This document shows, one piece after another, positions 13,065 through 53,376 of a DNA stretch of 64,000 nt. The stretch lies in IMG/VR virus record IMGVR_UViG_3300005826_000294, positions 124,001-188,000 of that record; one strand, 5' to 3'. Position numbers and translations under genes: made by a program. The notes under the pieces are model-generated. The model searched no databases. It saw nothing but the letters and a program-made list of their open reading frames with translations, and was not told the origin of the DNA. Numbering within the stretch: position 1 is the stretch's first letter; each line of letters opens with the position of its first letter.

Positions 13065-15611
13065 TTAGAACAATCCTACACTTATGTCTATGAAAATCCA
13101 ATTGGCTGGATAGTTAGGCTCTACCTCAACAACAATATTATATTGTCTTGGTTCAACATCATCTCTGGATACTGATAGATTTCTATAATCAGTAATAAGA
13201 CCTTTAGAAACAAAAGCATTTAGTAGTTTTATTGCTTTTTGAGTTAATGATGGAATTAGAGTTTCATCACTAGGTTGCCCAATAAAAGATCTAAAACTAC
13301 GACGCATTGTTCTTGCTAATTGATCACGGATAAAGATAATAGAGATTTCCTCTTCTTCTGGGGCACCGCTTTGAGTAGTAGTTTTACCATGTTGAACTCT
13401 TCCACCACCAGTAACTGGCTGAATAACGGTAATTCCAGCGTCACCAAGTTTATTGAGAACTGTTTGCTTATATACCTTATCATTTAAAATAGTAAAACCT
13501 GTAAGTATCTTAAATGTAAGAGGCATTGCGATATTTGGTTCTCCTGCTAACCAACCGCCCGCGGCTGCAGCAATATAATATCCTGGAATTGTAGTTCGAG
13601 TTCCATTTATAACTCTTATAATTTCATCCGGATAAAAATAAACTACACGAAATGTATCACCAAAATTAGTAGATACTCCATAGTCCGCAAGATCTTCAAT
13701 ATTTCCATCCAAAATCTCTTCTGGATCATCACCTTGAATACCTTCTAAAATACCAATATCTTCAACAGCCGCAAGTTCGGTTCCAATAACATTATCAGTT
13801 GAAAGACCTTGAAGTGCTCCTGTTAATAAAACACGCTCTCTCTTATAATAGGTAGAAGACATACGCTCGCAATGAACTCTAAATGCTTGCTGAATTGCCG
13901 AGAATGTTTGAGTTGGAAGAGGAACAAGAATTTGAACATCTTGTGTTTCCAAAACATCAAGAATACTTGCCCAATTAGCATCATAAAAATCAGCATCATT
14001 TTGATCAATATAACTAACTCTTAAACCTTTCTTCAAAGCAAGTGCTAAATCGGTTGTAAATAGGATTCTCTGTGATTCATTTCCAGGTAATAATAATTGC
14101 CATTTAACATTACTTGCCGAAATAAATGATCCGGAAGTTCTTGTAATTTTAACTGTATTAGGATCTACAACCTCAGAAATAGAGTATCTACCATCATTAA
14201 CTGTTCCTGTATAGAAAATATCAATTTCTTTACTTTGGGTTATAGCTTGTGAAGTAAAAATTGCAGTTTCACTATAAAATGTTGCAGTTGTTCCGACACC
14301 AATAGGAGTAATTGTCGCATCATTAGCACTTTGTTCAATTTGATCATCAGAAACAACTGTATAACTATATGAATAACCACTTTGACCTGGATCCATAAAT
14401 TCCTGCATCAATAGAGTATCTACACCAGTTTGCTCATAAGCAGAAAAGGCGGCTGTAATATCTGGATCATAGAAAGTTATTTTATTAGGAAAAATCTGAT
14501 CTTCTGTTCCATCAGTATTTAGAATAAATAAATTAACTGTTGTATCACCATCTGGTTTTCCAGGATAATCAATAAAGAAAATCAAATCATCAGCATTAGC
14601 ACTTCCAGTTGCCCCTCCAATACCAGTAAGAGAATTATAGGCCGGAAGAACAATATCAGAGGTTCTTCTTGGAAGAGGTGGTTTGGCTTGAACTGCTAAA
14701 ACAGAAGTTGCTCCATTTTCAAAAGCCATTTGAGCACCGAGTGAAAGAGTATTTTCAGTGCTTGGAGTTCCATATGTAGCAAATAATTTTCCAGGATCTG
14801 TAAAAAGCTTAGGATCTTCTACATCATTAGAAGCAATATATCGTGCTTCAAGCTTATCCATACTTTGAAGAACTTTACTATCTACCTCAATAGTAAATTT
14901 ATCACCAACAGCAAAAGGCTGAGCTGGAGATGGGTTGTTATAAATAGCAAACGATAAAACACCATTATCAACAACATTTCCATCACTTATCCAAGTGTAA
15001 GGTTGTCCATATCCATCGGAAAGTTGTCCAGAAACAGAACCTCTTACAATAAATGTAGCAGTTTCTCTAATTGGATTGCCAGAACCATCTTTTAGAACAC
15101 TAGTACATCTTATAGTCCAGGTTTCTGCTGTAGCATTTGTGTCTGATAAAGTTGGAGTTGATAAGTATCCATCCCCAATATTTGTAGAAGCAGTACTATA
15201 TAGTTTTCCACCCTTATCAATAATACTAGCACTCTGCATTTCAATTTTACCAGTAGCAACTTCAAGTTTAGCATCATATTGAGATGAAAAACTTGTTCCA
15301 TCAATAGTTCCTTCTAAAACTCTAAGTGGCGACCCATTTAGAAGAAGTGTAGTTCTATTTGTGACGATAGGATAATTTGCTAAACGAAAAAATCTTCCAT
15401 AACCATCAGAGGTTGCGGTGAAAGTAGGATTGAAACCATCTTCTCCATTTCCTTCTGCTGATTCTATAACTGTTTCTTCTCTTCGGCCTTCTCCAATAAC
15501 ACTAAGAATACGAAGACCCCCTGGTATAGAAAGTGCTCTTTGTAGAGTCCTTATTCTTGAAAATGTATCAGGTTGACTATAACCGACAATTCCTGGAATA
15601 TTTATTCCCAT
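13065..15611 (-). CDS. Contractile tail sheath protein
   Basis: 848 aa; C-terminal 'ISIIFIRDQLARTMRRSF...FIGQP...YNIVVEVEPNYPANWIFIDISV' is a typical sheath terminus; upstream of the tube genes. Confidence 0.85.
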   Translation of the reverse strand: MGINIPGIVGYSQPDTFSRIRTLQRALSIPGGLRILSVIGEGRREETVIESAEGNGEDGFNPTFTATSDGYGRFFRLANYPIVTNRTTLLLNGSPLRVLEGTIDGTSFSSQYDAKLEVATGKIEMQSASIIDKGGKLYSTASTNIGDGYLSTPTLSDTNATAETWTIRCTSVLKDGSGNPIRETATFIVRGSVSGQLSDGYGQPYTWISDGNVVDNGVLSFAIYNNPSPAQPFAVGDKFTIEVDSKVLQSMDKLEARYIASNDVEDPKLFTDPGKLFATYGTPSTENTLSLGAQMAFENGATSVLAVQAKPPLPRRTSDIVLPAYNSLTGIGGATGSANADDLIFFIDYPGKPDGDTTVNLFILNTDGTEDQIFPNKITFYDPDITAAFSAYEQTGVDTLLMQEFMDPGQSGYSYSYTVVSDDQIEQSANDATITPIGVGTTATFYSETAIFTSQAITQSKEIDIFYTGTVNDGRYSISEVVDPNTVKITRTSGSFISASNVKWQLLLPGNESQRILFTTDLALALKKGLRVSYIDQNDADFYDANWASILDVLETQDVQILVPLPTQTFSAIQQAFRVHCERMSSTYYKRERVLLTGALQGLSTDNVIGTELAAVEDIGILEGIQGDDPEEILDGNIEDLADYGVSTNFGDTFRVVYFYPDEIIRVINGTRTTIPGYYIAAAAGGWLAGEPNIAMPLTFKILTGFTILNDKVYKQTVLNKLGDAGITVIQPVTGGGRVQHGKTTTQSGAPEEEEISIIFIRDQLARTMRRSFRSFIGQPSDETLIPSLTQKAIKLLNAFVSKGLITDYRNLSVSRDDVEPRQYNIVVEVEPNYPANWIFIDISVGLF

Positions 15612-15683
15612 TAACCAATCCTCCTAAATTTTTTCTATGATGTATATTTCAATAAAATACAGCACTTAATCGCTATACAATAA

Positions 15684-15699
15684 TATTGATAGTTTTTTT
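15684..15699 (-). promoter_or_regulatory. Putative late promoter AAAAAAACTATCAATA (copy upstream of sheath)
   Basis: 16-mer also found at 42806 (identical) and 56771 (one mismatch), all intergenic and upstream of virion genes. Confidence 0.65.
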
Positions 15700-15778
15700 A
15701 ATTTCCAACATATTGAAATGATAGAGCAATTGTTTTCTATCAATTTTTTAACATATTTTAAACTTTAATAGGGGAAAA

Positions 15779-16861: not shown

Positions 16862-17207
16862 TAATGAAGCTTTTTGCGTAAGATGCTTTAAAATAAAAGA
16901 TAAAAAAAATTTTTATGCCAGAAAAGATAGTGGCCGTCCGCTTAGTTATTGTATGAAATGTCAAAATGAAGTTAAAATATTAAAATTAGAAGAAAAATTA
17001 GAAAGAATTATTGAAGAACGTGGGGGAATATGTAAAGATTGTAAAATATCATATCCAACCCCTATATATGAATTTTACTATGAAAATAAAACATATAATA
17101 TAAGTAAAGCAAAAAACATGTCTATTGAAAGAATTAAAAAAGATCTAAAAGATCATATTATGTTATGTAAAAATTGTAGTGCTATTAGAAAATGGGTAGG
17201 AAGTTAA
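16842..17207 (+). CDS. Small Cys-rich HNH-like protein, possibly degenerate
   Basis: CxxC pairs, 'RGGICKDC', 'LCKNCSAIR'; the expected catalytic His residues are not evident. Confidence 0.45.
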   Translation: MKPKLDDNEAFCVRCFKIKDKKNFYARKDSGRPLSYCMKCQNEVKILKLEEKLERIIEERGGICKDCKISYPTPIYEFYYENKTYNISKAKNMSIERIKKDLKDHIMLCKNCSAIRKWVGS

Positions 17208-17956
17208 GTATCAAGATCAGATTGATCAACAAGAGTTGTATCTGGACTGGCTCCAAATATATTATAATTAAAACAGAAATTTATAGCATGAACTAAGTTT
17301 TCAATTGGTAAAGCCCGTCTCCACTCTGAAAAAGCCTCTACTGTTATACTTTGTAGAAATACATGATCATTTCCCCATTGTTCATTACTTTCATTCCCAA
17401 TACTAACATTTTTTATAAACAATCCGGCTTCATAAAGTTCCTGTCTTGCTTTTCCAATAAGAAAAGATGAAATAATATCAGTCAATTCCTCTCTATCTGG
17501 AATACTTTCTGAGGCAATTACAATCTCAAAACTTTGTTCCCAAGCACCAGCAACAATATGATGTGTTGGAACATTAATATAAGACCTTCCACCATAACCA
17601 TCTAGTACAAGATCTAAACGATATTTTGTAGTTTGATTTTGATTAAAACTCACATGATAAGTTCTTCCAGAAGAATATTTTACGACAACAGCAGGCCAAA
17701 ACCTAATATCATATCTAAATGAATCTCCTATAAATATTCTTGTAGTTCTTTCTTCTTGAATATCTGGAGGCATATCAGTAAGATCTGGTGTTAATGGAAA
17801 TCCAAAAGCATCAGTTCTATATTTGTAGAATGTATCTTGACGGAAATATTCCCTTAATGCGTCTATAAGAAGATTTTTTCCTTGAGAAACAGCAGTTTGC
17901 TGAACAAAACTTGATAATTGAAAAAGATCGCTATAGACACGATGTGAGGCCGACAT
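17204..17956 (-). CDS. Tail terminator / tail completion protein
   Basis: 250 aa upstream of the sheath; position equivalent to T4 gp15. Confidence 0.55.
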   Translation of the reverse strand: MSASHRVYSDLFQLSSFVQQTAVSQGKNLLIDALREYFRQDTFYKYRTDAFGFPLTPDLTDMPPDIQEERTTRIFIGDSFRYDIRFWPAVVVKYSSGRTYHVSFNQNQTTKYRLDLVLDGYGGRSYINVPTHHIVAGAWEQSFEIVIASESIPDREELTDIISSFLIGKARQELYEAGLFIKNVSIGNESNEQWGNDHVFLQSITVEAFSEWRRALPIENLVHAINFCFNYNIFGASPDTTLVDQSDLDT

Positions 17957-18462: not shown

Positions 18463-18474
18463 TACTTTCTCCTT

Positions 18475-21400
18475 TTATAAGGTATAATTCACTCTCACTT
18501 GTAAAACATATATTGTACCAACAGTATTTTGTGGTATTAATCTTATCGCATGTACATCTTCATATTGCATTATATTATTTCCAGATGGAATTACAATTTC
18601 TTCTTGGATTCCATTACCTTGGGCATCTGAGGCAGCTCTAATTGGTATTGTTGTTTGTAAACTTCCAAATCCTCTACTTAGATTCCATTCTAATTGAAAA
18701 TCCCCTTTAACTCCTGCAGATATATTATAATAAACTTCAACATTATTGATTGTAGCACCAGCAGGAACTATTTCTGTACTAAAATAAAAATTTAAATTAT
18801 AATAAGTAGCATCATATGTACTACTAGAAACTACCCATCCTCCTCCATAAGTTATCCAACTCGAAAAACTACCACTTATAGCTGAATCTATTACGGCTGC
18901 ACCATTTGGAAGAACTACATTATAAGTTTGTCCCTTATTCATATAATCTACATTTTTAGAACCACCATCTGTAATCATAGGCCCAGAAGAAGAAGTTGCA
19001 GTAAAATCATTATTTGTGATTAAACAATAATATGATACAGACCCAAGTTCTAAAACAGCTTCAGTAGTATATGATACAGTTCCTCTAAATACATTATTAT
19101 TTATTAAAGTATTTAGAGTAGAATTAATATAAAGATGAGTTTTTGTATTACTTTCAGTAGTTATGAAGTTTCCAATCACTTGACTTCGACTTGATTGAAA
19201 ATCGACTACTCTATTAGTTAATGATAATGATGTAGAAATAATATTATTATTGACTAATTTAATATTTATATGAGTTGTATTATGACTCATACTAACTAAT
19301 GTATAATTATCTGATGAAGTGAATGTATTATTAGAAACAACTATATTTGGACAATTAAAGGTTTTTATTGGAGCACAGCAATTTATTATACTATTTTGAG
19401 AAACAATAGTCCCATCACAGTTTTCCATATATATGCCTTGATCTGAAGAGTTTCCATAAAAATCTCTTACTTTATTTCCAACCATACTATCTTCAATATG
19501 ATCACCTCCAGAAGTTCCTCCTCCACCATCAAATACAATTGCTTGCTTCAACCCTATATTTGATCCACTATTTTTTAATATATTATAAGAAAGAATACAA
19601 TCTTGACTAGTATTTGATATTAATATCCCTATTCCAGATGCAGAACTAGAATCCGTTATATTTATAATATTTTTATCTACCAATGTTTTATTAGGATCAA
19701 TTAATTTTATAATTCCATCAGTTGCGGATAAAGAAATATCTGAACTTGTAATTAAATTATTTTTTATTATAGAGTTTTCATCACTATTAAGAATTATTGC
19801 TGATACATATAGTTCATTAAATCCGCAATCAGAAATTATATTATTACTTGTATTTGTTAAAGCTAAAATGCCTGTATTTATATTTGAAAAATAACAACCT
19901 TTAATTTGGCATTCTGTTAAAGTAAGAGCTTCTATCCCTATATTTGTAGAAACCACACTTGTATAAGAAATATTTGAATTTATAATAAATGAATTCTGTA
20001 AAATATTAGTTTTTATAGCCGATCCAGCAGATGTTGGCGATCCAAGATTAATCATACAATTATTCATATATAAATCTACAATTCCAGTTCCAGCAGAAAT
20101 ATACATAAAATAATTATCATTTGTAGAAGTTAATGTGCTTTGAGAATTATTAATATGTATAGTGTCAATACTAGTTGTAGAATAAAACACATAAGCATCG
20201 ACTGAACCAATAGAAGTATCAAAATTAAAAATACAATTATTAATTATTGTATTAGTTAATGAAGTTGAATATACTATTCTTGAAAAACCTGATGAATTTC
20301 TAATATTCTCAAATAAACAATTTTCTAATGTTAAATCTACAATGCTCGTTGTAGAATTTCCAATTATAGCAGATGTGCCCGCAGAACTATCCATTTCAAT
20401 TTTTAAATCTCTAATACAAAGACCTGTAATTGAAGTTCCACTTATTGGAGCAAATAAAGTAGTTCCAGAACCTATAATAAATATATTTGGACGAGTTATT
20501 ATAGAACTACCACTTCTTACATCTCCAAGAATAGTAACTCCATCTGGAACATATAATGGACCATTAGAAAGATTATGAGTAATAGTCCCACGAACTCTCA
20601 CTCTTCTTGAAGTTGTTCCACTATTATAAATATAATAAAATGCTGATTGTAATGAAGAAAAAGATCCATTAATTTCTTCATCATCTGCTACTAAATCTAT
20701 TTTATTATCAATATTATTTACAAATCTTCTCAAATCACGAATATCAGTAACCGTGTTTGAAGAATTAACATCTACTTGAGCTAAAATTACTTTATCCGAA
20801 CTGTTAATTATTTCTAAAACAGATGGTGTGGTAAATCCAGAACCAACCTGATCATCCTTCATAAATTGTAAAATACCATCTCCATCTACAAAAATATTAT
20901 AAGTAGAAATTAAGCCATCTTTTGGAATATCTAAACCAGTAGTACTAACAGAATAAATATTTCCATCTACAAGAACCTGTCCACCTTCAACAATAAGACT
21001 TCCAGATACTTCAAATCCATAAATTACACCATTTCCTCTTAAAAGTGATCTTGGATATGAAATATAATCTCTAGAAAAATCATTTCTTATATCTTTACGT
21101 CCTACTGTTCCAAGCAATCTTCGGTCAGATAAATGTTTAAACCCGTTAGTATCATGAAGAACTTGTCCTACTTGAACATATTTATCTTCAGATGCTCTTT
21201 TATATATTGTAAGGTCTATTGCCTGATCTGTTGTTGTAGTTAAAAATCCATCATTAGCAATTTCTATATCAACATAATCTACATTATTGTAATCATATAT
21301 TCTAAATCTATAACCAATAACATCAGAAGTTGGAAGAATGTATGTAGTTCCCGGATCTGTAACATCAACACTAGAAGCTGGAGATGTTACTGGAGTTCCC

Positions 21401-23355: not shown

Positions 23356-23373
23356 AAGGTTTCCTCCGGAAAA

Positions 23374-24027: not shown

Positions 24028-24459
24028 CTATTCAGCATTATGTAATGCTTCTAAAAGTGATGTATAAAATGAAACAGATTGAGTAAATTTTTCATATTTT
24101 TGTAAATATTTTTCTGCTTCTTTCTCATCGGATTGTAATAAAGAGTTATACATATTTAAAGCATTTTCTGCTAAAATATTAGCTTTTTCCTTATTCATAT
24201 AATAAATTGCTGTATTATTCGGAGTAACAAAATCATTATTCTCATATCCATCAATTATAGTGATTATATCATATCCATCAAATCTATATGATTGATCATT
24301 AATATGTTCATAAATAAATGGAGGAAACTCTCTACCATCTAAAAGTTTTACTGTTTGATTATTTTTAATTTCTTCATTATTTAATTCTGCTACTCCACTA
24401 TCAAATTCTTCTTCTGAAATTTTCGTATACATTTTTTTTATTTGAAACTCTATACTCAT
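24028..24459 (-). CDS. Hypothetical protein (two DGY motifs)
   Basis: 143 aa ORF in the operon. Confidence 0.55.
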   Translation of the reverse strand: MSIEFQIKKMYTKISEEEFDSGVAELNNEEIKNNQTVKLLDGREFPPFIYEHINDQSYRFDGYDIITIIDGYENNDFVTPNNTAIYYMNKEKANILAENALNMYNSLLQSDEKEAEKYLQKYEKFTQSVSFYTSLLEALHNAE

Positions 24460-28503: not shown

Positions 28504-28504
28504 A

Positions 28505-38606: not shown

Positions 38607-38884
38607 TATACTGGTGTCCTCCTATATGTTATAAAAAGTGGGCAACCGACTTCTGGAGGAAAAGGATCATCATCTATAAATGTAAATTCTAATGCTCCTG
38701 TCTCAAAAAAATCATTATTCTTTGTATATGAAACTCCATTATAAATCACTATCAATGAATCAGGAATATATTCTTGAGTTGTATTAAATATAAGTTTATA
38801 TCCGTCAATTTGATCAGTTATGTCCTCTTCAACATGTAAGTGATCTGGAGCAACTGTTCCATCAAATAAAGAAGAAATCGGCAT
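38606..38884 (-). CDS. Small beta-sandwich virion protein (putative)
   Basis: 92 aa; 'LIVIYNGV...DF.E' domain related to the C-termini of 39282..41444 and 42306..42725. Confidence 0.5.
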   Translation of the reverse strand: MPISSLFDGTVAPDHLHVEEDITDQIDGYKLIFNTTQEYIPDSLIVIYNGVSYTKNNDFFETGALEFTFIDDDPFPPEVGCPLFITYRRTPV

Positions 38885-44415: not shown

Positions 44416-44425
44416 TTACTTTCCC

Positions 44426-45566: not shown

Positions 45567-45583
45567 CTCCTATTGACGGCACT

Positions 45584-46684
45584 TTAACTATCATCATAAC
45601 TCAAACAATAAAAAGTTGCTGTTGCTAACGAACCTCCTAACTCAACATCATGTTGTAATTTAACTAAAATTTCCATACCATAATTTCCAAATATCTCTGT
45701 AACTGCTTGATAGTTCCAAGGATATGTGATTACATCAACATCAAGATCTCTCCAAGTTGGAGTTTGACATGTTGTAGCAGGAATTGGGGGTTTAGAACCA
45801 TTAGCCTCATTAATATAATCTATTTGTGATTTATAAATAGTTGGATTCCCAAGAGGAATTTTTGTACCACTTGGATATGGAGTTGGTGTGTATTGTGGAG
45901 CAAAAACATCAACTAATCCATATGGTTGAAATGTAACAGAATCTTTAATTGAAATATTGCTACTAAATTGAACCTCAGTAGATACAATTTTTAACTTTTT
46001 TCCACTTTGTGGTCTTAAAATCCAATCAGATCCATTTACTTCATATGTATCTACAGTGATAGTCTCAGATTCAGATAATGGAGTTAAAAATGTAACTCTA
46101 GAATTACGATAATCTACTATAAAATCCCCTCCATATCCATCATGAGGGTCTTGTTCTGTTTTCTCTACATCATCAACATAAACTTTTAATCTAGGGACAT
46201 AACCTTCTTCTGTTGTAATAAAATCTTCATCACTATATTTTCCATGATAATTATCAATCCAACATTTTCCAGTTGGACTATCATAATTGGTGTGATCACC
46301 AGAATCAACTAAAGTCTGTCCAGATACTTTTATAGATTTAAAATACCAAGTAGTTTTATCAGTCCAATTTGGTGTAATCGCTGTATATCTCGATCCTTCA
46401 GTGCTTTCAACAGATACACGAAGAACATTATCTTTTGTTACTTTTTCTAATGAATTTACTTCTTCTATAGGAACTCCATCATGTCCATTAAGTGTAAATC
46501 CAAGAAGAGATTCATCTCCAACATCTAATTCATCTTTCATAAAAACACTAATAGTATCTCCAATAACATTTATATGACTTAATGCTATTTTTATTTCACT
46601 ATCGCGAATCTCTTCAGTCAATTTTTCAATATCTACAGCTTCATTTAAAGTATCTGATGCTACAGAGTATGTATATTCTGCCAT
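45584..46684 (-). CDS. Putative virion structural protein
   Basis: 366 aa, acidic and beta-rich, within the fibre cluster. Confidence 0.5.
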   Translation of the reverse strand: MAEYTYSVASDTLNEAVDIEKLTEEIRDSEIKIALSHINVIGDTISVFMKDELDVGDESLLGFTLNGHDGVPIEEVNSLEKVTKDNVLRVSVESTEGSRYTAITPNWTDKTTWYFKSIKVSGQTLVDSGDHTNYDSPTGKCWIDNYHGKYSDEDFITTEEGYVPRLKVYVDDVEKTEQDPHDGYGGDFIVDYRNSRVTFLTPLSESETITVDTYEVNGSDWILRPQSGKKLKIVSTEVQFSSNISIKDSVTFQPYGLVDVFAPQYTPTPYPSGTKIPLGNPTIYKSQIDYINEANGSKPPIPATTCQTPTWRDLDVDVITYPWNYQAVTEIFGNYGMEILVKLQHDVELGGSLATATFYCLSYDDS

Positions 46685-47268
46685 TATATTCTCCTTACAG
46701 AAACTTTACTATCTTTAATTGATATTTCTTTACCATTTTTTGTTGTTGATGCTTGAAATTTTATACAATGATAACCAGATTCCCATTCTATATTTAAAAA
46801 ACTACACTGGGTAATCCAACTCTCACTGTCTAATGATTCAAGAACATATAAGTCTTCATTATCTATATTAACTCTTAAAGAAATTAATCCTTTTTTATTT
46901 TTTCTTTTAACATTTGTGGTCCAATCTATACGATAATTACCAGAACAAAAAGGACTATTTGGGTTTATAGATATAATTGTCATTGGCTCTGTAGAAGATG
47001 TATTTATCTCTTGTTCTTGTGTTCCTTCTAATTCATTTATTAAAGTATTATTTTCTATTCCAAAATCTACAATATCTTTTTCTTCCTGATTCATTTCAAT
47101 TATATTATATCCATCATATCCATCATACCCATCAATTTTCCAATATTTTGAAGGAATGTCTTCTACATTAGATAAATCAGGATTAATTATCCAATCTTCT
47201 GTTGAATAGTCAGGAGTATTAACTGATAATAAGTATTCTTTTGTAGTCTTATTTAAAACATTCGCCAT
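46684..47268 (-). CDS. Putative virion protein with DGYDGYDGY
   Basis: 194 aa; 'SVNTPDY...WIINPDLS.V..IP.KYWKI' N-terminal module. Confidence 0.5.
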   Translation of the reverse strand: MANVLNKTTKEYLLSVNTPDYSTEDWIINPDLSNVEDIPSKYWKIDGYDGYDGYNIIEMNQEEKDIVDFGIENNTLINELEGTQEQEINTSSTEPMTIISINPNSPFCSGNYRIDWTTNVKRKNKKGLISLRVNIDNEDLYVLESLDSESWITQCSFLNIEWESGYHCIKFQASTTKNGKEISIKDSKVSVRRI

Positions 47269-47270
47269 AA

Positions 47271-47909
47271 CTATCTCCTACGAGGTCTTAAAGCCGCATC
47301 ATATACATAACTAGGAGCACCAGATGCTGAAGAAAAATTAATCTGACTTTGTCCCATATTTTTTACCACCCCTGTTCCAGAAATTGTAGAACCATTTGCT
47401 CCACCAAAAAGAGTCAAACGAGTAGTCATTCCATATACAATTGAATCACTTCCACGAGAATTATAAATTGTTAATGCTTCGGACGCATTTAATTTTCTTG
47501 TATATAATCTAATATCATATAAACTTCCATTAAAATAATTAGTTGTTCCATATCTACTAAATAAAGCCGCAAGACCACTTTGAGGAGTATTAACAGATGT
47601 ATTTGTATTTATTAATGCTCCATTAACATACATCTCTGCCGTATTATTAAAATCATTCCATGTACATACAAAATGATATAATACTCCAATTGAAAGAGTA
47701 TAATTTAACCCACTGCCTTCATTACCAAAATCATTATAAAACGTTGTTCCATCTATTCTGCCTTCAAAATCGTTTCCAGTTCCAAAAAAACGCTGAACAC
47801 CAGTTAAAGAATTAGCACGAATCCAAAAACTAATAGATCCTATTATACCAGGAGAAAATGATGATACACTTTGTGCTCCATAGCCAGTTCCAGGTGCTGA
47901 AAGTCCCAT
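47271..47909 (-). CDS. LamG / concanavalin-A-like lectin domain protein
   Basis: 'SISFWIR...LYHFVCTWN...MYVNG...YFNGSLYDIRLYTRKL'; start at 47909 (TAATG overlap) preferred over 47945. Confidence 0.75.
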   Translation of the reverse strand: MGLSAPGTGYGAQSVSSFSPGIIGSISFWIRANSLTGVQRFFGTGNDFEGRIDGTTFYNDFGNEGSGLNYTLSIGVLYHFVCTWNDFNNTAEMYVNGALINTNTSVNTPQSGLAALFSRYGTTNYFNGSLYDIRLYTRKLNASEALTIYNSRGSDSIVYGMTTRLTLFGGANGSTISGTGVVKNMGQSQINFSSASGAPSYVYDAALRPRRR

Positions 47910-50900
47910 TAGCTCCATCCTATCGTTATAGAATGTAATAACCAATCACCAGGTAAAGTATCAGTTGGAACATTACGACATAACTCAAAAAGATATGTAA
48001 CTCCAACTGTTAATCCTAATGTGCTTATAGCTATTGTTTGAGAATCCTTTTGATAATACACATTGTTAGGCATAGATAAGTTTGTTAATAATGTTGGAGA
48101 TCCCCATGCAGGTATAACAGCATTGTCAGGAATTGCTCTTTTATATAAGTTTAATCCAACATTTGCTGTTGTGGCTGCCGTGGCTCTACGACTAAGAAAT
48201 CCTAAAATAATGTTTGTAGCCCCTGTTGGAACACGAATTGTAAATCCTACACCTTCTACTGTTGTATCATCAAATGCTCTTACTGACAATGCTGTGTTAT
48301 TAGCATCTGGAATAAGAGGTGCTAGTGAATTAACTGCCCAGTCTGAACTTACAGGAGATTCTAATTGATCAGCTTGAAATATCTTATGAGGAACAATAGA
48401 ACTTCCACCACTAACCGCCGCCCATGATGGATTTGAACCAACACCATTTGTTTTTAAATAATAACCAGATGTTCCATAACCTAAACGAACCCAGTTTGTT
48501 CCATTATGATATAAAATATCCCCTTGAACAGGATTTCCAGCAGCCTGTACTGATCTTACTGTTGTTGAGTTTCCATTATTTATATTAGTAGTGTGACCAG
48601 TAACCAAATTGTCTGCTAAATAACAATTATTTGTATTTGCACCAGAAGCAATTCTTATTCCATCCCCAGTGTTATTTAAAATTCTATTACTAGCAATAAG
48701 AATATTAGTACTATTAGCATCTGCTGTTACATAAATACCATGACTACCATTACCATGAATATGGTTATTAGAAATTAAACTATTTGTATCTACAGTACAT
48801 TCAATTCCACTTCCACCATTGCTTGCTATGTGACATGAAGTAACTAAACTATCTTCTCCAGTCCATATTCCTTCTCCAACATTGTTTTCAATAGTACACA
48901 TAGAAATTACATCTTCTTCTCCATCTGTATCAATGCCTACTCCACCATTGTTACTTGAAACACAACTAGAAATTATTGTTGAGTTAGAACCTATTGCGGT
49001 TTCTATACCCTCAGCATCATTATAGTTTAAAACACAATGAGAAATAAGTGTAGATACTGCTCCACTTTGAACTAAAATACCATTTGATCCATTATTACAG
49101 GCATTGGTAGATGAAATGGCAACAGTATTACAACCAGATCCAACTACAATACCATTTCCAACATTACCAGATACAAGTCCTGAAAAAGATACTGATCTAC
49201 AATTACTATATGTAATTCCTACTCCACATTGAACAACTCCAATATCAGAAAAAGCCGCTGATCCGGAATCTTCAACTACTACACCAACATTACAACCTTG
49301 TATTTCCATTCTACGAAAAATACAACTAATTGCTCCTCTTACTAATAATGCATTTCCTGTTGCTCCACTTAAAGTTATATTATCTATATTAGCAGAAGTA
49401 ACCGCTGAGGTTCCAAGCATTGCTTGTCCAGATATTGTTAAACCTTCATAAGTTCCAGCAACAGTTAAATGAGTATTATCTGTAATACTAGCAATTTGAT
49501 AAAATGTTCCTCCAATAGCAATGAAATCTCCTGGAGATAAATTTGTAAAAGTCGTTCCACTACCTACTACAGCAGATGTTCCAGATGTTATAGATATAGT
49601 CCCAGATTCTTCTGTTGTACCTCCATTTCCATCAATAGTAACACTATATCCATTAGATAAATCTATAATACAATCATCTTCTCCTAATAGAAGACCTCCA
49701 TCTGGAACCACTATATTTGCTGTCTCAACATATGTTCCTGTTCTTACAAAAACAGATTTAGCTCCAGATGTAAAAGCAGCTGAAGGAAGTGTGTAATCTC
49801 CACCAGAAGGGGCAACAATAGCATCATATAAAGTTTGACCTCCACCAGGGCCCGCTGGGCCCGTAGCTCCAGATGCTTCTGCATCACGGATTACTAAACC
49901 ACAAGCATTAGCCGTAGTTATAAAATCTTTATCGTTAAATTCCGTTGCTTGAATTTTTATTTTATCGCCATCATTTAATTCGGCTAAAATTGTTGCAGAT
50001 CCACCACCAGATAAATCATTTTTAGATACTCCTGATCTAATACGACTTCCGCCTATTTCATTATATCCACCACCTGTATCTAATACTAAACGAGCAAGAG
50101 CATGTCCATCATTCCCACCAGTTACTTCAAAACTCATATAATATGTAATTTCATACCAACCATCAGTATTTATTTCTACAACGGCAGAATCTGTTGTATG
50201 TGTAAATGCGGAATCTTCACGGACTTCAGTATCAAGAGTTATATCAACCCAACTTGGACTATCAGGAATATCAATTCCACCAGCAGCATCATAAGCAAAA
50301 AATAAAGCTCTACTACTTCCAGATCCTCCTGGAGGCTCTGCCCATGTCCCATCTGCTCTAAGATAATTAATAATTCCACCACCAAGTTTTGGTAGAAGAC
50401 CATGATAAGATGTTGTTGAATTTAAATCTGTATTATCATCAGGAGAAGCTAAATCATCTAATTTAATAGCATCATCTCCTCCTGACTGATGAGTAGATGC
50501 GTGTAATGGAAGAGAACCTGGTATAGAAGCACATTGCCATCTAGAAGATGTTGTTGTATAAGACAGAGCAACTCCACTTCCTGATTTTATAATCAAATCT
50601 GAATCATTTGGTAATGCTAATCTTTGAGTACTAGTAGATCCCAGATCTTCATGTTTTAGAGTTAGATCATAATCAGATAAATTTGTAACCCACATAAATT
50701 TCCCATGATCAACTTGTGAAAACCCAGTGACTTCAAAATTTTGATTTGCCGAATGAAATTGAGCCATTCCATAATCTTCAATATCAACATTATCATAAGA
50801 GGTTGTAGATCCGACGTTTATTCCATATGGACTTTGGGCGATACTTCTAATATTGGCAGCAGTATCAGTTTGAATAGGATCGCCCATAGTAGCAATACGT

Positions 50901-51985
50901 CCATCATCGCTAATAATAAAACTACTATTTTGTAAGATTTTACCTGTTGTCCCATCCCATCGAGCGGCGGCATTATCTGTAGAACTACCCGGTCCCGAAA
51001 TATCTCCAGATCCTGATCCTGATACAACATATTCAATATTTCCAGAACCAGAATTATATGCTAAAATATATCCATCAGCAATTCCTGAATCATCAACATT
51101 AACTCCCATAATTTGATAAGCATCTTGTCTATCAGCTAAAACCCCATTAAGCCCAGCAACATTTATTTCATCATCTCCACCATTTTGATGCCTTGGAGCA
51201 TGTAATAGAAAATCAGAATTAAGATTAGTTATTTCGCTTTGTAGATAAGCATCTTGAGAAATTGAATCAGAATTAAGATTAGTTAATTCACTCTGTAAAT
51301 AAGCATCTTGACTTATAGAATCAAAGTTTAAATTAGTTATTTCGCTTTGTAGATAAGCATCTTGAGAAATTGAATCAGAATTAAGATTAGTTAATTCACT
51401 CTGTAAATAAGCATCTTGACTTATAGAATCAGAGTTTAAATTGGTTATTTCACTCTGTAGATAAGCATCGGCAGAAATATAATCAATATAAATACTTGAA
51501 ATTTCACCTTGTAAATAGGCATCTTGACTTATAGAATCAGAGTTTAAATTAGTTAATTCACTCTGTAAATAAGCATCTTGATTTATAGAATCAGAGTTTA
51601 AATTAGTTAATTCACTCTGTAAATAAGCATCTTGATTTGTTATAGTTTGAAATATATCAGGTAAATCATATCCATCAACCAAATTAACATTAATTATATT
51701 ATAGCCCTCAAGATCCAAATTACCATTAATTGTAGTATTATTAATAACAATTTCAGAATCGGCCGCTTCTTGTGGAGTATTAGATGGATCTGTTTCAACA
51801 AAAACCCATCCTAAAGTTTCCATATAATTATCTAAATCATCTTTTGAAGTTGATGGTGCTGTAACATCCCAAACAACTAAAGAAGCAATATAACCAGAAG
51901 AAATAGAGGAAGCATCAGCAGGTGGAACTTGGTTTTTAACCTTATTAATATCTACACCAGAAAATTTATATCTATAAACAGGCAT
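47909..51985 (-). CDS. Long tail/head fibre with coiled-coil repeats and beta-helix domain
   Basis: 1358 aa; 17-aa repeats, HxxxHxxGGDD motifs, right-handed beta-helix in the C-terminal half. Confidence 0.7.
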   Translation of the reverse strand: MPVYRYKFSGVDINKVKNQVPPADASSISSGYIASLVVWDVTAPSTSKDDLDNYMETLGWVFVETDPSNTPQEAADSEIVINNTTINGNLDLEGYNIINVNLVDGYDLPDIFQTITNQDAYLQSELTNLNSDSINQDAYLQSELTNLNSDSISQDAYLQGEISSIYIDYISADAYLQSEITNLNSDSISQDAYLQSELTNLNSDSISQDAYLQSEITNLNFDSISQDAYLQSELTNLNSDSISQDAYLQSEITNLNSDFLLHAPRHQNGGDDEINVAGLNGVLADRQDAYQIMGVNVDDSGIADGYILAYNSGSGNIEYVVSGSGSGDISGPGSSTDNAAARWDGTTGKILQNSSFIISDDGRIATMGDPIQTDTAANIRSIAQSPYGINVGSTTSYDNVDIEDYGMAQFHSANQNFEVTGFSQVDHGKFMWVTNLSDYDLTLKHEDLGSTSTQRLALPNDSDLIIKSGSGVALSYTTTSSRWQCASIPGSLPLHASTHQSGGDDAIKLDDLASPDDNTDLNSTTSYHGLLPKLGGGIINYLRADGTWAEPPGGSGSSRALFFAYDAAGGIDIPDSPSWVDITLDTEVREDSAFTHTTDSAVVEINTDGWYEITYYMSFEVTGGNDGHALARLVLDTGGGYNEIGGSRIRSGVSKNDLSGGGSATILAELNDGDKIKIQATEFNDKDFITTANACGLVIRDAEASGATGPAGPGGGQTLYDAIVAPSGGDYTLPSAAFTSGAKSVFVRTGTYVETANIVVPDGGLLLGEDDCIIDLSNGYSVTIDGNGGTTEESGTISITSGTSAVVGSGTTFTNLSPGDFIAIGGTFYQIASITDNTHLTVAGTYEGLTISGQAMLGTSAVTSANIDNITLSGATGNALLVRGAISCIFRRMEIQGCNVGVVVEDSGSAAFSDIGVVQCGVGITYSNCRSVSFSGLVSGNVGNGIVVGSGCNTVAISSTNACNNGSNGILVQSGAVSTLISHCVLNYNDAEGIETAIGSNSTIISSCVSSNNGGVGIDTDGEEDVISMCTIENNVGEGIWTGEDSLVTSCHIASNGGSGIECTVDTNSLISNNHIHGNGSHGIYVTADANSTNILIASNRILNNTGDGIRIASGANTNNCYLADNLVTGHTTNINNGNSTTVRSVQAAGNPVQGDILYHNGTNWVRLGYGTSGYYLKTNGVGSNPSWAAVSGGSSIVPHKIFQADQLESPVSSDWAVNSLAPLIPDANNTALSVRAFDDTTVEGVGFTIRVPTGATNIILGFLSRRATAATTANVGLNLYKRAIPDNAVIPAWGSPTLLTNLSMPNNVYYQKDSQTIAISTLGLTVGVTYLFELCRNVPTDTLPGDWLLHSITIGWS
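51212..51637 (-). repeat. Eight in-frame 51-bp (17-aa) repeats QDAYLQSE(L/I)TNLNSDSI(S/N)
   Basis: Visible in the translation and at DNA level; one unit is degenerate. Confidence 0.9.
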
Positions 51986-52725
51986 TATGATGCTACCTCC
52001 AAACTAGCAACTATATTATCAGGACTACTGGAAATTGAAGAAGATTTATTTACTCTTATTGCTATAAGATCACCAGCAGATACATTTGCCGAATTTACTA
52101 AATCTGAACCATCTTGAGCAGTATTAGACATGGCAACTACTAATGAAGAACCAGATCCATTAACCAATACTGTATAAGTGATTGTGGCAGAACCAGATCC
52201 AGCGGAATTATGACGAACTCTAAGATTTTTAAGAACTCCAGAATATGGAATTCTCATTGAAGCAACAGTTGTCTCAGCAACAGAATCATCATATCCTGGA
52301 GTTAAATATCTAACTGTTGTTGAAGTAGCAATATCATCATCTCCCCATATTAAAATAGCATGAACAAGATCTCCTACCTGAACACTTTTCTTATTATAAC
52401 CATCAGCACTATCCTCTATAACTACTAAATCAGAAAATACTGGATCGGTTTTTCCACTAATACCACTGATTTCATTAGCAACATTATCATGAATCGCATC
52501 ATTATCAATGCTGGTTCCAGAGTTTGTTATTTCAACCCAAGTTGGAGTGGTTTCTGTTAAAACCCACCAGGTAAGAGTATCTATTTCTTTTGCTATTTTC
52601 CCAATATCAGTAGATGTAAAACCAGATGCTCCAGTTCGTGCCGAAGAATCTGCATATTCATATGCGTGTGAAATATGTATTCCATCTGTTATATCTTGCT
52701 GACTATGTTTAGGATGACAAGTCAT
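51985..52725 (-). CDS. Putative fibre/virion protein
   Basis: 246 aa, Ser/Thr-rich with beta-sandwich C-terminus, TAATG-coupled to the fibre gene. Confidence 0.5.
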   Translation of the reverse strand: MTCHPKHSQQDITDGIHISHAYEYADSSARTGASGFTSTDIGKIAKEIDTLTWWVLTETTPTWVEITNSGTSIDNDAIHDNVANEISGISGKTDPVFSDLVVIEDSADGYNKKSVQVGDLVHAILIWGDDDIATSTTVRYLTPGYDDSVAETTVASMRIPYSGVLKNLRVRHNSAGSGSATITYTVLVNGSGSSLVVAMSNTAQDGSDLVNSANVSAGDLIAIRVNKSSSISSSPDNIVASLEVAS

Positions 52726-52728
52726 AAT

Positions 52729-53376
52729 TTACCCCACAATCAATAGTATTCCATTATCATTTATTAGCCAACCGCATTCTCCAGTTAAAGGTAATGATGG
52801 TGTTAAATCTCCATCAACAGAATATAGTATCTGCCCACAACATGTTGGAGGTGTTATTGATATTTTAAGTTGTTCATTGCTTCCTTCGTTTTCAACACTA
52901 ATATCAATGCCATATCCCTCAATAATTTTATTTTCTAAATAACCTGCAGAAGTATCATTTGAAGATACTTTTACTAATTCATCTCCACCAGTGCTTCCAC
53001 CACCACCAGTTGTATTTATCCATATAGCAGATCCTGCTGTATTATCTATTAAAACATATTCATAACCATCTGTTGTATCAATCCACCTTAATCCAACATC
53101 ATATCCATCATTTATATCTTCATTGATTGTTGGAGAAATAGAAGAAATTACATATAACGAATCATCTCCGCTTCCAAGGTGTGTATTTATATGAAGATCT
53201 GGTGGTAATGTATCTGGATGTCTTAAATTAAAAACGCCATACGCATCCTTAGCATAGAAATAACCATCACTATATCGCATTTCACGTATAGATCCAGGTA
53301 ATCCATAACCATCTTCAAGAAATTTAATTCCATCAGCTTGGTTAATTCCAGCAAATTCATCTGGAGTGCGAGGCAT
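52729..53376 (-). CDS. Putative fibre/virion protein (four DGY)
   Basis: 'PT...D...GYDVG.RWI.T....Y...DNT.G.A.W' module typical of phage fibres. Confidence 0.55.
   Translation of the reverse strand: MPRTPDEFAGINQADGIKFLEDGYGLPGSIREMRYSDGYFYAKDAYGVFNLRHPDTLPPDLHINTHLGSGDDSLYVISSISPTINEDINDGYDVGLRWIDTTDGYEYVLIDNTAGSAIWINTTGGGGSTGGDELVKVSSNDTSAGYLENKIIEGYGIDISVENEGSNEQLKISITPPTCCGQILYSVDGDLTPSLPLTGECGWLINDNGILLIVG

What the first reader, a model, noticed from the sequence alone, without database searches (positions are those of the whole stretch)
13065..53376. A virion-wide Asp-Gly-Tyr (DGY/DAY) tag: candidate undescribed phage protein-modification or docking system
Seen: hand count of 40 DGY in 14 virion-cluster proteins (about 8,100 aa): sheath 3, tail terminator 1, 1626-aa fibre 4, 143-aa 2, 1347-aa fibre 2, neck 7, 60-aa 1, 92-aa 1, 720-aa appendage 8, 366-aa 1, 194-aa 3, 1358-aa fibre 2, 246-aa 1, 215-aa 4. 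There are about 19 further DAY. A rough composition estimate gives about 2-3 DGY expected by chance. There are none in the hub, spike fragment, tape measure, tube initiator, both tubes or the chaperones (over 3,500 aa). Codons vary (GAT/GAC; GGA/GGT/GGG/GGC; TAT/TAC), so selection is on the peptide and not on a DNA site. The host proteins are otherwise unrelated folds. Inference: DGY is a recognition sequence on outward-facing virion parts, for example for Tyr O-glycosylation, sulfation or phosphorylation, cross-linking, cleavage, or binding of a decoration protein, perhaps shielding the particle from host defences. Possible writers or readers in this window are the HExxH peptidase, the permuted papain enzyme, the metallophosphoesterase, the DUF2156 GNAT and the ARC-like ATPase; the enzyme may also lie outside the window.
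Basis: partly seen in the sequence, partly recalled or inferred. Interest (0 to 1): 0.92.

Follow-up and report, generated by a model that had tools for sequence, protein, structure and literature searches.

The report
Asp-Gly-Tyr tag on phage tail proteins
The outer tail proteins of a large group of uncultured giant phages carry about ten times more Asp-Gly-Tyr tripeptides than chance predicts, and a conserved sugar-transferase gene always sits just after the fibre genes, so the tripeptide is most likely a new attachment signal for sugars on the virus particle.

Summary
The window has 43 DGY against 4.3 expected (z 19.5). It is the most enriched of all 8,000 tripeptides, and DAY comes third. 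The signal acts on the peptide: codon use at the sites matches the genome's, and the DNA motif never occurs out of frame.

The enrichment is specific to DGY. Every permutation and every one-residue neighbour stays near 1x. It marks a clade: 72 related loci hold 923 DGY against 67 expected, while three unrelated myophage tail modules show none.

Sites are conserved far above background, yet they also turn over. Carriers are the sheath's outer domains, the protein next to the sheath gene, fibres and baseplate periphery. The tube, tape measure and hub have none in any relative.

None of the writers proposed inside the window gained support. About 29 kb beyond the window's left edge, directly after the fibre genes on the same strand, lies a glycosylation cluster. 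Its GT4 domain follows the fibre gene in 49 of 52 loci.

Best reading (0.45): D-[G/A]-Y is an acceptor signal for phage-encoded, cytoplasmic glycosylation, probably on Tyr. The modification itself is untested.

The parts
13065..15611 (-). Tail sheath, 848 aa; DGY at aa 69, 147, 199
   Evidence: PHROG and Pfam sheath hits on aa 674-845. The AF2 model has pLDDT 86.5 and Foldseek top hits are the phage 812, T4 and P1 sheaths. All three DGY lie in coil or turn. In the 60-sequence family alignment, DGY occupies 23 columns, 22 of them at reference positions 58-493, outside the conserved C-terminal core.
17204..17956 (-).
   Evidence: The DGY is kept at the same alignment position in all relatives compared, at 33-76% identity, where background tripeptide conservation is 5-54%. 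It is also kept in L029, L031, L039 and L120.
18475..23355 (-). 1626-aa fibre with beta-helix region; DGY at aa 154, 452, 490, 592; DAY at 395, 1053
   Evidence: Three of the four DGY are shared with homologues that are 36-37% identical.
24028..24459 (-). 143-aa protein; DGY at aa 61, 70
24469..28512 (-). 1347-aa beta-helix tail spike or fibre; DGY at aa 13, 365; DAY at 64
   Evidence: Pfam Beta_helix 9e-31. Both DGY are shared with the L015 homologue at 27% identity.
29383..31359 (-).
   Evidence: The array is conserved in L005 (64% identity), L029 and L041.
38606..38884 (-). 92-aa protein; DGY at aa 27
39282..41444 (-). 720-aa protein with four repeated modules of about 84 aa; DGY at aa 28, 37, 134, 144, 253, 373, 446, 530; DAY at 172, 360, 433, 517, 585. 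Thirteen of its 24 Tyr are in D[GA]Y.
   Evidence: The L015 homologue (46% identity) has 7 DGY, 4 at shared positions.
45584..46684 (-). 366-aa protein; DGY at aa 182
46684..47268 (-). 194-aa protein; tandem DGYDGYDGY at aa 46-54
47909..51985 (-). 1358-aa beta-helix fibre; DGY at aa 104, 304; nine DAY in 18-aa tandem repeats (aa 119-262) and one more at 288
51985..52725 (-). 246-aa protein; DGY at aa 108
52729..53376 (-). 215-aa protein; DGY at aa 22, 37, 90, 103; DAY at 44
   Evidence: Fourteen homologues were found. The sites are largely conserved, with swaps among DGY, DAY, DEY, DQY and DSY at the same columns.
36520..37404 (-). 294-aa conserved protein; DAY at aa 149, which aligns with a DGY in the L015 homologue
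876..13046 (-). DGY-free inner-tail block: 1568-aa hub-like protein, 261 aa, 747-aa tape-measure-like protein, two chaperone-like ORFs and two tube paralogues, with homing endonucleases between them
   Evidence: Zero DGY in 3,722 aa here, and zero in the homologous proteins of every relative examined. The tube is assigned by Pfam Phi812_tail_tube. The other roles rest on gene order and weak PHROG hits.
32795..32977 (-). 60-aa ORF with a C-terminal DGY, inside the homing-endonuclease island; probably incidental
   Evidence: The L041 homologue lacks the DGY.
28505..29386 (-). LAGLIDADG homing endonuclease; its DGY is part of the family's 'DGDGY' catalytic motif and is unrelated to the tail signal

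Best explanation
D-[G>A]-Y is a short recognition signal (sequon) displayed on loops of the outward-facing tail proteins of a large clade of uncultured jumbo phages. It is read in the cytoplasm by a phage-encoded GT4-family glycosyltransferase. This is the conserved N-terminal domain of a 745-aa double glycosyltransferase, encoded directly after the fibre genes. The enzyme most likely attaches a sugar to the Tyr hydroxyl. Variable downstream transferases then extend the glycan with sugars made by the phage's own pathway (dTDP-3-amino-3,6-dideoxyhexose plus methylation).

The result would be a glycan coat on sheath, fibres and baseplate periphery. Its function would be shielding from proteases or defences, solubility, or adhesion.

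Shown: the enrichment, its specificity, its conservation, its restriction to certain proteins, its loop location in the sheath, and the synteny with the glycosyltransferase. Inferred: that the glycosyltransferase acts on these proteins, that DGY is its signal, and that Tyr is the acceptor.
For: 1. A trans-acting, clade-specific reader is needed.
- The enrichment is 10-14x and sharply specific. In pooled relatives DGY is 69 against 9.5 expected, while DGF is 1.2x, DGW 1.7x, NGY 0.8x, EGY 0.4x, DSY 0.9x and DAY 1.8x.
- It occurs in many unrelated proteins with no shared flanking sequence.
- It is absent from three unrelated myophage tail modules and from non-clade loci.

2. Selection.
- Exact DGY conservation is 77%, 65% and 60% in pairs at >=60%, 40-60% and <40% identity. 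For DG[^Y] it is 40%, 19% and 32%, and for all tripeptides 39%, 16% and 7%.
- New sites still arise. DGY occupies 23 different columns in the sheath family.

3. Tandem arrays resemble multi-site acceptor regions. Examples are DGYDGYDGY, five DGY within 20 residues, and clusters in L118.

4. Location. Sheath DGY lie in coil or turn segments of the non-core domains. The inner tail proteins have none.

5. Candidate writer.
- After the fibre genes, on the same strand, lie a double GT4, two GT2, a GT47, a SAM methyltransferase, FdtA, a DegT aminotransferase, a 4,6-dehydratase and a nucleotidyltransferase.
- Both GT4 domains keep the EX7E motif. The N-terminal domain is the more conserved half, and it is the only part kept in distant relatives.
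- In 49 of 52 unique loci with at least 5 kb of downstream sequence (fibre identity 29-78%), this domain starts 6-4,544 bp after the fibre gene, median 753 bp.
- The fibre blocks hold 923 DGY against 66.8 expected. The glycosyltransferase and everything downstream hold 14 against 20.2.
- A distant GT4 in a non-tail context has 0 DGY nearby.
- About 100 homologue clusters exist, some carrying inteins, which is typical of conserved core genes.

6. No flippase or oligosaccharyltransferase Pfam domain appears in the cluster. This fits direct cytoplasmic transfer.

7. Tyr O-glycosylation and the FdtA pathway are both known from bacterial S-layer glycoproteins (PMC2943079).
Against: - No chemical evidence of any modification exists.
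- The glycosyltransferase and the DGY enrichment are both clade-wide. Their co-occurrence is therefore not phylogenetically independent, and no lineage was found that lost one and not the other.
- Phage glycosyltransferase clusters can instead modify DNA or host surface glycans.
- No GT4 enzyme is known to me that glycosylates Tyr.
- Three loci, including the source phage, lack the glycosyltransferase within the 10-kb flank. In the source it lies 11 kb further on.
- DGY is mildly over-represented in phage proteins in general, about 1.5-1.9x in non-clade loci. Part of the signal may therefore be structural.
Confidence: 0.45

Rival explanations
1. DGY is a structural or ligand-binding micro-motif with no covalent modification. 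It would be a beta-strand, Asp-Gly turn, Tyr element that stabilises beta-rich tail proteins, or that binds a metal or a host carbohydrate. It would have spread in this clade by descent and convergent selection. The neighbouring glycosyltransferase cluster would serve another purpose.
For: Hydrophobic residues are over-represented at positions -2 and -1: 57% and 48%, against 35% background. Many sites follow a strand in the sheath model. A Kelch-type propeller in an unrelated phage (L076) shows that DGY can be a purely structural repeat element. DGY is mildly enriched in phage proteins generally. Positional conservation is also what a structural residue would show.
Against: A generic turn motif should also tolerate NGY, DGF, DGW or DGI, yet none is enriched. 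It should appear in other phages' tails, and it does not. Tandem arrays in low-complexity stretches are not fold elements. The enrichment spans sheath, FN3, beta-helix and other unrelated folds. Clade specificity still calls for a clade-specific partner.
Confidence: 0.25
2. DGY is the signal for a different trans-acting factor. This could be another Tyr modification (phosphorylation, sulfation, cross-linking). It could be a covalent or non-covalent docking site for a decoration protein, for instance a SpyTag-like 'hydrophobic-D-A-Y' strand captured by a CnaB-like domain. It could also be a recognition site for an assembly chaperone such as the AAA+ ATPase in the virion block.
For: The virion block encodes a 168-aa protein with CarboxypepD_reg and weak SpaA/SdrD_B (CnaB-type) hits, with no DGY. 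It also encodes an AAA+ ATPase with a proteasomal-ATPase OB domain, a metallophosphoesterase and a crotonase/ClpP-like ORF. D-[GA]-Y preceded by hydrophobic residues resembles the reactive strand of CnaB2 (my own knowledge, not tested).
Against: None of these genes shows the deep, tight synteny with DGY-rich genes that the glycosyltransferase shows. The AAA+ gene is not at the homologous place in L015. Most DGY sites lie inside folded domains and could not donate a strand. No kinase or sulfotransferase was seen in the 128 kb examined.
Confidence: 0.15
3. The signal is an artefact or a DNA-level feature: a chance excess, repeat inflation, compositional bias, or a nucleotide motif such as a methylation or nuclease site.
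For: Some counts come from tandem repeats: 7 DGY in two arrays, and 9 DAY in one 18-aa repeat.
Against: The z-score is 19.5-23.6 against within-protein shuffles, and no shuffle exceeded 14. The enrichment persists in relatives with GC from 31% to 58%. Codon choice follows genomic usage, and the DNA motif occurs 43 times in frame and never out of frame or on the other strand. Without the arrays there are still more than 30 independent sites.
Confidence: 0.02

Closest known systems
Virion glycosylation in mycobacteriophages (Freeman et al. 2023, as summarised in PMC12619734)
   Same: Phage-encoded glycosyltransferases are proposed to decorate structural proteins made in the cytoplasm. A shielding role is plausible.
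   Different: In those phages the glycans sit at the C-termini of capsid and tail-tube subunits. Here the candidate sites are internal tripeptides on sheath, fibres and baseplate periphery, and the tube has none. The proposed acceptor is Tyr within a defined D-[G/A]-Y signal. The glycosyltransferases show no close homology: the best hits in deposited phages are Streptomyces phage enzymes at 22-26% identity.
Tyrosine O-glycosylation of bacterial S-layer proteins (Paenibacillus alvei, Thermoanaerobacter; PMC2943079)
   Same: Tyr-linked glycans occur on self-assembling surface proteins. The same nucleotide-sugar chemistry is used (FdtA isomerase with a DegT-type aminotransferase for 3-amino-3,6-dideoxyhexoses).
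   Different: S-layer glycans are built on a lipid carrier and transferred en bloc outside the membrane by an O-oligosaccharyltransferase. No sequence consensus is known for them. Here no flippase or oligosaccharyltransferase domain was seen, the substrates are cytoplasmic, and a sharp three-residue signal exists.
Staphylococcal SdgA/SdgB and streptococcal GtfA: GT4 enzymes that glycosylate proteins directly in the cytoplasm
   Same: They share the GT4 GT-B fold with the EX7E motif. The acceptor hydroxyl residue lies next to Asp in repeated short motifs (Ser-Asp repeats). Multi-site arrays are modified.
   Different: Only weak sub-threshold similarity was found: SdgA 66.6 bits against a cut-off of 800, and that hit lies in the C-terminal domain. 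Their acceptor is Ser, not Tyr. They are bacterial adhesin systems, not phage systems.
Bacterial sequons with an obligatory acidic residue (PglB D/E-X-N-X-S/T; Bacteroidota D-S/T-hydrophobic)
   Same: A short linear signal has Asp one or two positions before the modified residue (my own knowledge).
   Different: Those are periplasmic, lipid-linked systems acting on Asn or Ser/Thr. DGY is a different motif and, if modified, it is modified in the cytoplasm.
Virus-encoded fibre and capsid glycosylation in giant eukaryotic viruses (mimivirus fibrils, chlorovirus major capsid protein)
   Same: The virus carries its own nucleotide-sugar pathway, including DegT-type aminotransferases, plus glycosyltransferases, and glycosylates its own external structures at non-canonical sites (my own knowledge).
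   Different: Those are eukaryotic viruses with unrelated structural proteins. No DGY-type signal has been described for them.

Membership tests
Phage virion protein glycosylation system | The phage encodes glycosyltransferases | tested here: met
   The source contig encodes a double GT4 (Pfam Glycos_transf_1 4.6e-47, two stretches), two GT2 and a GT47, starting about 28 kb left of the window.
Phage virion protein glycosylation system | The glycosyltransferase genes are linked to structural genes | tested here: met
   The genes are on the same strand, directly after the fibre genes. In 49 of 52 loci the glycosyltransferase starts within 4.5 kb of the fibre gene.
Phage virion protein glycosylation system | A glycan is covalently attached to virion proteins | not testable with these tools
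   This needs mass spectrometry or glycan staining of virions or recombinant proteins.
Phage virion protein glycosylation system | Acceptor sites are accessible on the assembled protein | tested here: inconclusive
   Sheath DGY lie in coil or turn segments of non-core domains in a model with pLDDT 86.5. Side-chain accessibility could not be computed, and the other proteins were not modelled.
S-layer-type tyrosine O-glycosylation | Lipid-linked assembly with en bloc transfer by a membrane O-oligosaccharyltransferase | tested here: not met
   No oligosaccharyltransferase, flippase or ABC-transporter Pfam domain is present among the 13 cluster ORFs. Three ORFs have no hit at all, so this is not absolute.
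S-layer-type tyrosine O-glycosylation | dTDP-3-amino-3,6-dideoxyhexose pathway (RmlA, RmlB, FdtA, aminotransferase) | tested here: met
   NTP_transferase 1.2e-48, 4,6-dehydratase or epimerase 1e-54, FdtA, and DegT with PseC-like 1e-37.
SdgA/SdgB or GtfA protein O-glycosyltransferases (GT4) | Score above the NCBIfam family cut-off | tested here: not met
   SdgA scores 66.6 bits against 800, SdgB 41 against 800, and GtfA 38 against 575. The similarity is generic GT4 only.
SdgA/SdgB or GtfA protein O-glycosyltransferases (GT4) | Retaining GT-B enzyme with an intact EX7E motif | tested here: met
   EGxxxPxxE is present in both domains of all seven homologues checked.
Structural repeat motif within one homologous domain family (Kelch or Asp-box type) | The motif recurs inside homologous repeats that share flanking sequence | tested here: not met
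   There is no consensus beyond DGY apart from a hydrophobic bias at -2 and -1. The carriers include sheath, FN3, beta-helix and orphan folds. The L076 Kelch protein shows what a true case looks like.
DNA-level motif (restriction, methylation or nuclease site) | Occurrence is independent of reading frame and strand, with a fixed nucleotide sequence | tested here: not met
   All 43 occurrences are in frame 0. There are eight codon combinations, at genomic codon frequencies.
SpyTag/CnaB-type isopeptide docking | A partner CnaB-type domain with a reactive Lys and a catalytic Glu, and a tag on an accessible terminal strand | not tested
   There is only a weak lead. The 168-aa ORF 17956-18462 hits CarboxypepD_reg at 4e-8 and SpaA and SdrD_B at about 2e-3. 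Most DGY sites are internal.

The most novel reading that the evidence does not exclude
A phage-encoded, cytoplasmic tyrosine O-glycosylation system uses a three-residue sequon, D-[G/A]-Y. It coats the contractile sheath, fibres and baseplate periphery of a large and widespread clade of uncultured jumbo phages with a phage-made glycan containing a methylated or aminated 6-deoxyhexose. This would be the first defined sequon for phage virion glycosylation and the first sequence-defined Tyr glycosylation signal in prokaryotic systems.
Probability: 0.4. Interest if true: 0.9.

Novelty: new variant of a known kind. Interest (0 to 1): 0.8.

Why it matters
If D-[G/A]-Y is a glycosylation signal, it gives a sequence rule for predicting modified sites on phage particles. 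It also offers a compact tag-and-enzyme pair for site-specific Tyr glycoengineering. And it would explain how a major group of environmental jumbo phages dresses its tail, with consequences for adsorption, stability and evasion of host or predator recognition.

Even if the mechanism is different, the finding stands. A three-residue motif is under strong purifying and recurrent positive selection across more than ten unrelated tail proteins and more than 70 phage genomes. This phenomenon appears undescribed: three literature searches on the motif or on virion modification found nothing relevant. The question can be tested directly with recombinant proteins, although the phages are uncultured.

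Tried and rejected
- Nucleotide motif: rejected.
- Compositional or repeat artefact: rejected by within-protein shuffles and by relatives with GC from 31% to 58%.
- General property of myophage tails: rejected with phage G, Tunturi_5 and vB_EalM-132.
- Extended consensus around DGY: none was found.
- D-G-[S/T] as a wider hydroxyl sequon: DGT is about 2x in carriers and non-carriers alike, so it is not specific.
- In-window writers:
  - The HExxH ORF has only a sub-threshold SprT hit.
  - No papain or DUF2156 hit appeared in the ORFs scanned.
  - The metallophosphoesterase, AAA+ and crotonase-like ORFs have no specific link to DGY.
  - The conserved opposite-strand ORF 16842-17207 is a truncated HNH endonuclease.
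- Sequence search of PDB with the 720-aa, 658-aa and 250-aa proteins and with the N-terminus of the 1347-aa fibre: nothing useful.
- First AF2 run of the sheath with 9 sequences failed (pLDDT 48.5). A 60-sequence alignment built from a whole-library HMM search fixed it.
- Literature: no paper mentions a DGY motif in phages. The 'moraphage' paper (PMC12619734) could not be tied to this clade.
- Close relatives among deposited phages: none by DNA, by sheath or by glycosyltransferase.
- Natural negative control, meaning a clade member without the glycosyltransferase: none was found, because the gene is nearly universal. L120, whose sheath has no DGY, is only a 4-kb contig and its neighbouring 259-aa protein still keeps its DGY.
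- One look-up of an 88-aa ORF was not on record.
- Capsid genes were not located in the 128 kb examined.

Full report
**What the window is.** The window is part of a jumbo phage contig with about 31% GC. It appears as IMGVR_UViG_3300005826_000294 (301,683 bp) and as JGI Ga0074477_1264118 (312,596 bp). Window position 1 corresponds to about contig position 124,004. Nearly all genes are on the minus strand. No deposited phage is close. There was no DNA match, and the sheath is 24-29% identical to those of Bacillus phage G and others over its C-terminal part only.

**Check of the observation.**
Three further DGY lie in homing endonucleases, giving 43 in 64 ORFs (20,718 aa).
- Within-protein shuffles expect 4.26 +/- 1.99, with a maximum of 10 in 300 shuffles. 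The z-score is 19.5, and DGY is the most enriched of all tripeptides.
- DAY (19 against 2.5) ranks third, partly through repeats.
- The five permutations of D, G and Y are at chance. So are DGF, DGW, DGH, NGY, EGY and DSY.
- Codon use at the sites equals genomic codon use. The degenerate DNA motif GAYGGNTAY occurs 43 times on the two strands, always in frame 0 of an ORF. The signal therefore acts on the peptide.
- The block 876-13046 (hub-like, tape-measure-like, chaperone-like and tube proteins) has no DGY in 3,722 aa.
- I extended the sequence to 128 kb of the same contig (41,121 aa). There DGY is 68 against 7.6 expected (z 23.6) and DAY is 31 against 4.9 (z 12.5). These are the top two tripeptides.

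**It is a property of a clade, not of phage tails in general.**
- Relatives fetched through the sheath and other proteins have sheath identity from 83% down to 40% and GC from 31% to 58%. They show the same 7-14-fold excess.
- In ten pooled relatives (57,589 aa), DGY is 69 against 9.5 expected (z 22). Every one-residue neighbour stays between 0.4x and 1.9x.
- Three unrelated myophage tail modules give 3 against 1.9, 3 against 1.8, and 0.
- Among 79 loci fetched through a shared homing-endonuclease family, all strongly enriched ones turned out to be clade members carrying the same tail module. The single exception was a Kelch-type propeller, where DGY is part of each blade. That is a useful picture of a purely structural case.
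- A profile search of 1.84 billion protein representatives found the excess in more distant sheaths as well: 115 proteins with 49 DGY against 9.2 expected.

**Which proteins carry it.**
- Carriers are:
  - the sheath;
  - the 250-aa protein next to the sheath gene;
  - the 1626-, 1347- and 1358-aa fibres;
  - the 658-aa FN3 protein;
  - the 720-aa protein;
  - several small proteins.
- Left of the window, the carriers are the Baseplate_J protein and the 2303-, 948-, 582- and 670-aa proteins.
- Non-carriers, in every relative examined, are the tubes, the tape-measure-like protein, the 261-aa protein, the 1568-aa hub-like protein, the gp25-like sheath initiator, and the 751- and 554-aa baseplate proteins.
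- Homing endonucleases, the glycosylation enzymes and the genes right of the window are at or below expectation.
- Apart from the sheath, tube, sheath initiator and Baseplate_J, these roles rest on gene order and weak HMM hits.

**Selection on the sites.**
- Exact conservation of a window DGY in a homologue is 77%, 65% and 60% for pairs at >=60%, 40-60% and <40% identity.
- The matching figures for DG[^Y] are 40%, 19% and 32%. For [^D]GY they are 34%, 17% and 30%. For all tripeptides they are 39%, 16% and 7%.
- The site in the 250-aa protein is kept in all relatives compared.
- Sites also turn over. DGY alternates with DAY, DEY and EGY at the same columns and arises de novo, for example from DAT, RET or DGS. 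In a 60-sequence sheath alignment DGY occupies 23 different columns.
- There is no consensus beyond the tripeptide, except that hydrophobic residues are favoured at -2 and -1.
- Several proteins carry tandem arrays. Examples are DGYDGYDGY, five DGY within 20 residues conserved at 52-64% identity, and dense clusters in a distant relative.

**Structure.**
- The first sheath model, built from 9 sequences, was unusable.
- With 60 sequences the model reached mean pLDDT 86.5 and pTM 0.76. It matches the solved sheaths of phages 812, T4, P1 and others.
- The three DGY (aa 69-71, 147-149, 199-201) all lie in coil or turn segments next to strands.
- Across the family, 22 of 23 DGY columns fall at reference positions 58-493. 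These lie outside the C-terminal core that is shared with all sheaths.
- In T4 gp18 the additional domains form the outer surface of the tail. That is established knowledge, so the outward location here is an inference. Side-chain accessibility could not be computed.

**Candidate writers.**
- Those named inside the window found no support:
  - ORF 31419-31907 has only a sub-threshold SprT-like hit.
  - No papain-like or DUF2156 hit was obtained.
  - The AAA+ ATPase with a proteasomal-ATPase OB domain, the metallophosphoesterase and a crotonase/ClpP-like ORF are real, but nothing links them to DGY.
- Walking along the contig revealed a 12-kb glycosylation cluster on the same strand. It lies directly after the last fibre genes and one homing endonuclease, starting about 28 kb left of the window. 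It encodes:
  - a 745-aa protein with two GT4 (Glycos_transf_1) domains;
  - two GT2 enzymes and a GT47;
  - a SAM methyltransferase;
  - FdtA and a DegT-family aminotransferase;
  - an NDP-sugar 4,6-dehydratase and a nucleotidyltransferase.
- This amounts to a complete route to a dTDP-3-amino-3,6-dideoxyhexose plus the enzymes to assemble a glycan. No flippase or oligosaccharyltransferase domain was seen.
- Both GT4 domains keep the EX7E motif. The N-terminal domain is the better conserved: 58-65% against 47-60%. It is the only part retained, as a 413-433-aa protein, in a distant subgroup.
- About 100 homologue clusters exist, many on contigs of 180-460 kb, and some carry inteins.

**Synteny test.**
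- An alignment of the 948-aa fibre retrieved 77 loci, 72 of them unique, at 29-78% identity.
- Every one shows the excess. In total the fibre blocks hold 923 DGY against 66.8 expected in 307,864 aa.
- The glycosyltransferase and everything after it hold 14 against 20.2 expected in 135,183 aa.
- In 49 of the 52 loci that extend at least 5 kb past the fibre gene, a homologue of the GT4 N-domain starts 6-4,544 bp downstream, median 753 bp.
- One of the three exceptions is the source phage itself. There five extra fibre genes and a homing endonuclease push the gene 11 kb away.
- A GT4 at 33% identity in a non-tail context has no DGY around it.

**Interpretation.**
- The sharp specificity demands Asp, not Asn or Glu. 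It demands Gly, with Ala tolerated, and Tyr rather than Phe or Trp.
- Add to this the clade restriction, the spread over unrelated folds, the tandem arrays and the loop location. Together they argue for recognition by a clade-specific trans-acting factor that needs the Tyr hydroxyl and the Asp carboxylate.
- The only conserved candidate found is the GT4 enzyme welded to the fibre operon. I therefore favour a D-[G/A]-Y sequon for direct cytoplasmic glycosylation of the outer tail, probably on Tyr (confidence 0.45).
- The weak points are three. No modification has been shown. The enzyme and the motif co-occur throughout one clade, so the association is not phylogenetically independent. And phage glycosyltransferase clusters can serve DNA or host-surface modification.
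- The main rival is an unmodified structural or ligand-binding micro-motif (0.25). Next comes another modification or a docking or chaperone signal (0.15). Artefact or a DNA motif is excluded (0.02).

**Comparison with what is known.**
- Virion glycosylation is known in mycobacteriophages, at the C-termini of capsid and tail-tube subunits (summarised in PMC12619734).
- Tyr O-glycans and the FdtA pathway are known from S-layer glycoproteins. Those are transferred en bloc outside the cell and have no sequence consensus (PMC2943079).
- GT4 enzymes that act directly on proteins next to Asp, such as SdgA and SdgB, are the nearest mechanistic analogue. The phage enzyme is far below their family thresholds.
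- A three-residue Tyr-centred signal spread over a phage tail has not been described. Three literature searches on the motif or on virion modification found nothing relevant.
- I rate this a new variant of a known kind (phage virion glycosylation), with interest 0.8.

Noticed in passing
window 10228-10977, 11547-13046, 15779-17207, 28505-29386, 31879-36519, 54606-55721, 59887-63591: The homing-endonuclease load is very heavy. LAGLIDADG ORFs sit between the two tube paralogues and after the sheath gene, one of them a tandem double. A DUF723/DUF4379 endonuclease abuts an HNH ORF that is truncated to 121 aa, against 163-168 aa in relatives. A low-GC island (0.235-0.27) holds HTH and zinc-ribbon ORFs. 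HNH_repeat ORFs lie at the right end.
   Followed up: partly
relatives of L110:10001-12235 (proteins P0017, P0022, P0028 and others): In about 15 homologue clusters the conserved double glycosyltransferase carries an intein. These proteins are 1145-1210 aa long and hit Intein_splicing plus LAGLIDADG_3. This suggests the gene is a conserved core gene of the clade.
   Followed up: no
window 42826-45566: An AAA+ ATPase with a proteasomal-ATPase OB domain (PF16450), a metallophosphoesterase and a crotonase/ClpP-like ORF (phrog_1128) lie together inside the virion gene block. They may form an ATP-dependent unfoldase or protease module. In L015 the phosphoesterase is at the homologous place, but the ATPase is not.
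   Followed up: partly
window 47909-51985 (aa 119-262): The 1358-aa fibre contains eight or nine tandem 18-aa repeats, each beginning with DAY ('DAYLQSE.TNLNSDSISQ').
   Followed up: no
window 39282-41444: The 720-aa protein contains four modules of about 84 aa with a Cys-rich signature: PCC, then D-[A/S]-Y, then HR[F/W], then [D/N]-x-Y. The tripeptides PCC and HRW are themselves among the most enriched in the window.
   Followed up: no
window 29383-29500 (C-terminus of the 658-aa protein): There are runs of His-x-His type (HNH, NHNH, HTHT), as in the metal-binding tips of trimeric phage fibres.
   Followed up: no
window 58117-59139: The N6/N4 DNA methylase ORF (340 aa) aligns with only part of the roughly 540-aa homologues in relatives (L015 1-1632, L065 7226-8845). 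The gene may be split or truncated by neighbouring mobile ORFs.
   Followed up: no
L118:14499-16058 and the matching JGI 3300071358 contig: In the distant subgroup a tubulin/TubZ-like gene and a UvsW-like helicase follow the small glycosyltransferase and acetyltransferase cluster.
   Followed up: no
pooled relatives (L003-L023): The tripeptides NCW (12 against 0.3 expected) and CWF (10 against 0.3) are strongly enriched. They probably belong to a repeated domain, which I did not identify.
   Followed up: no
L108:5295-9353 (right of the window): A 1353-aa protein has a domain resembling a head-maturation protease (phrog_18299) and no DGY. A neighbouring 1054-aa protein has an endolysin-like domain and one DGY.
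   Followed up: no
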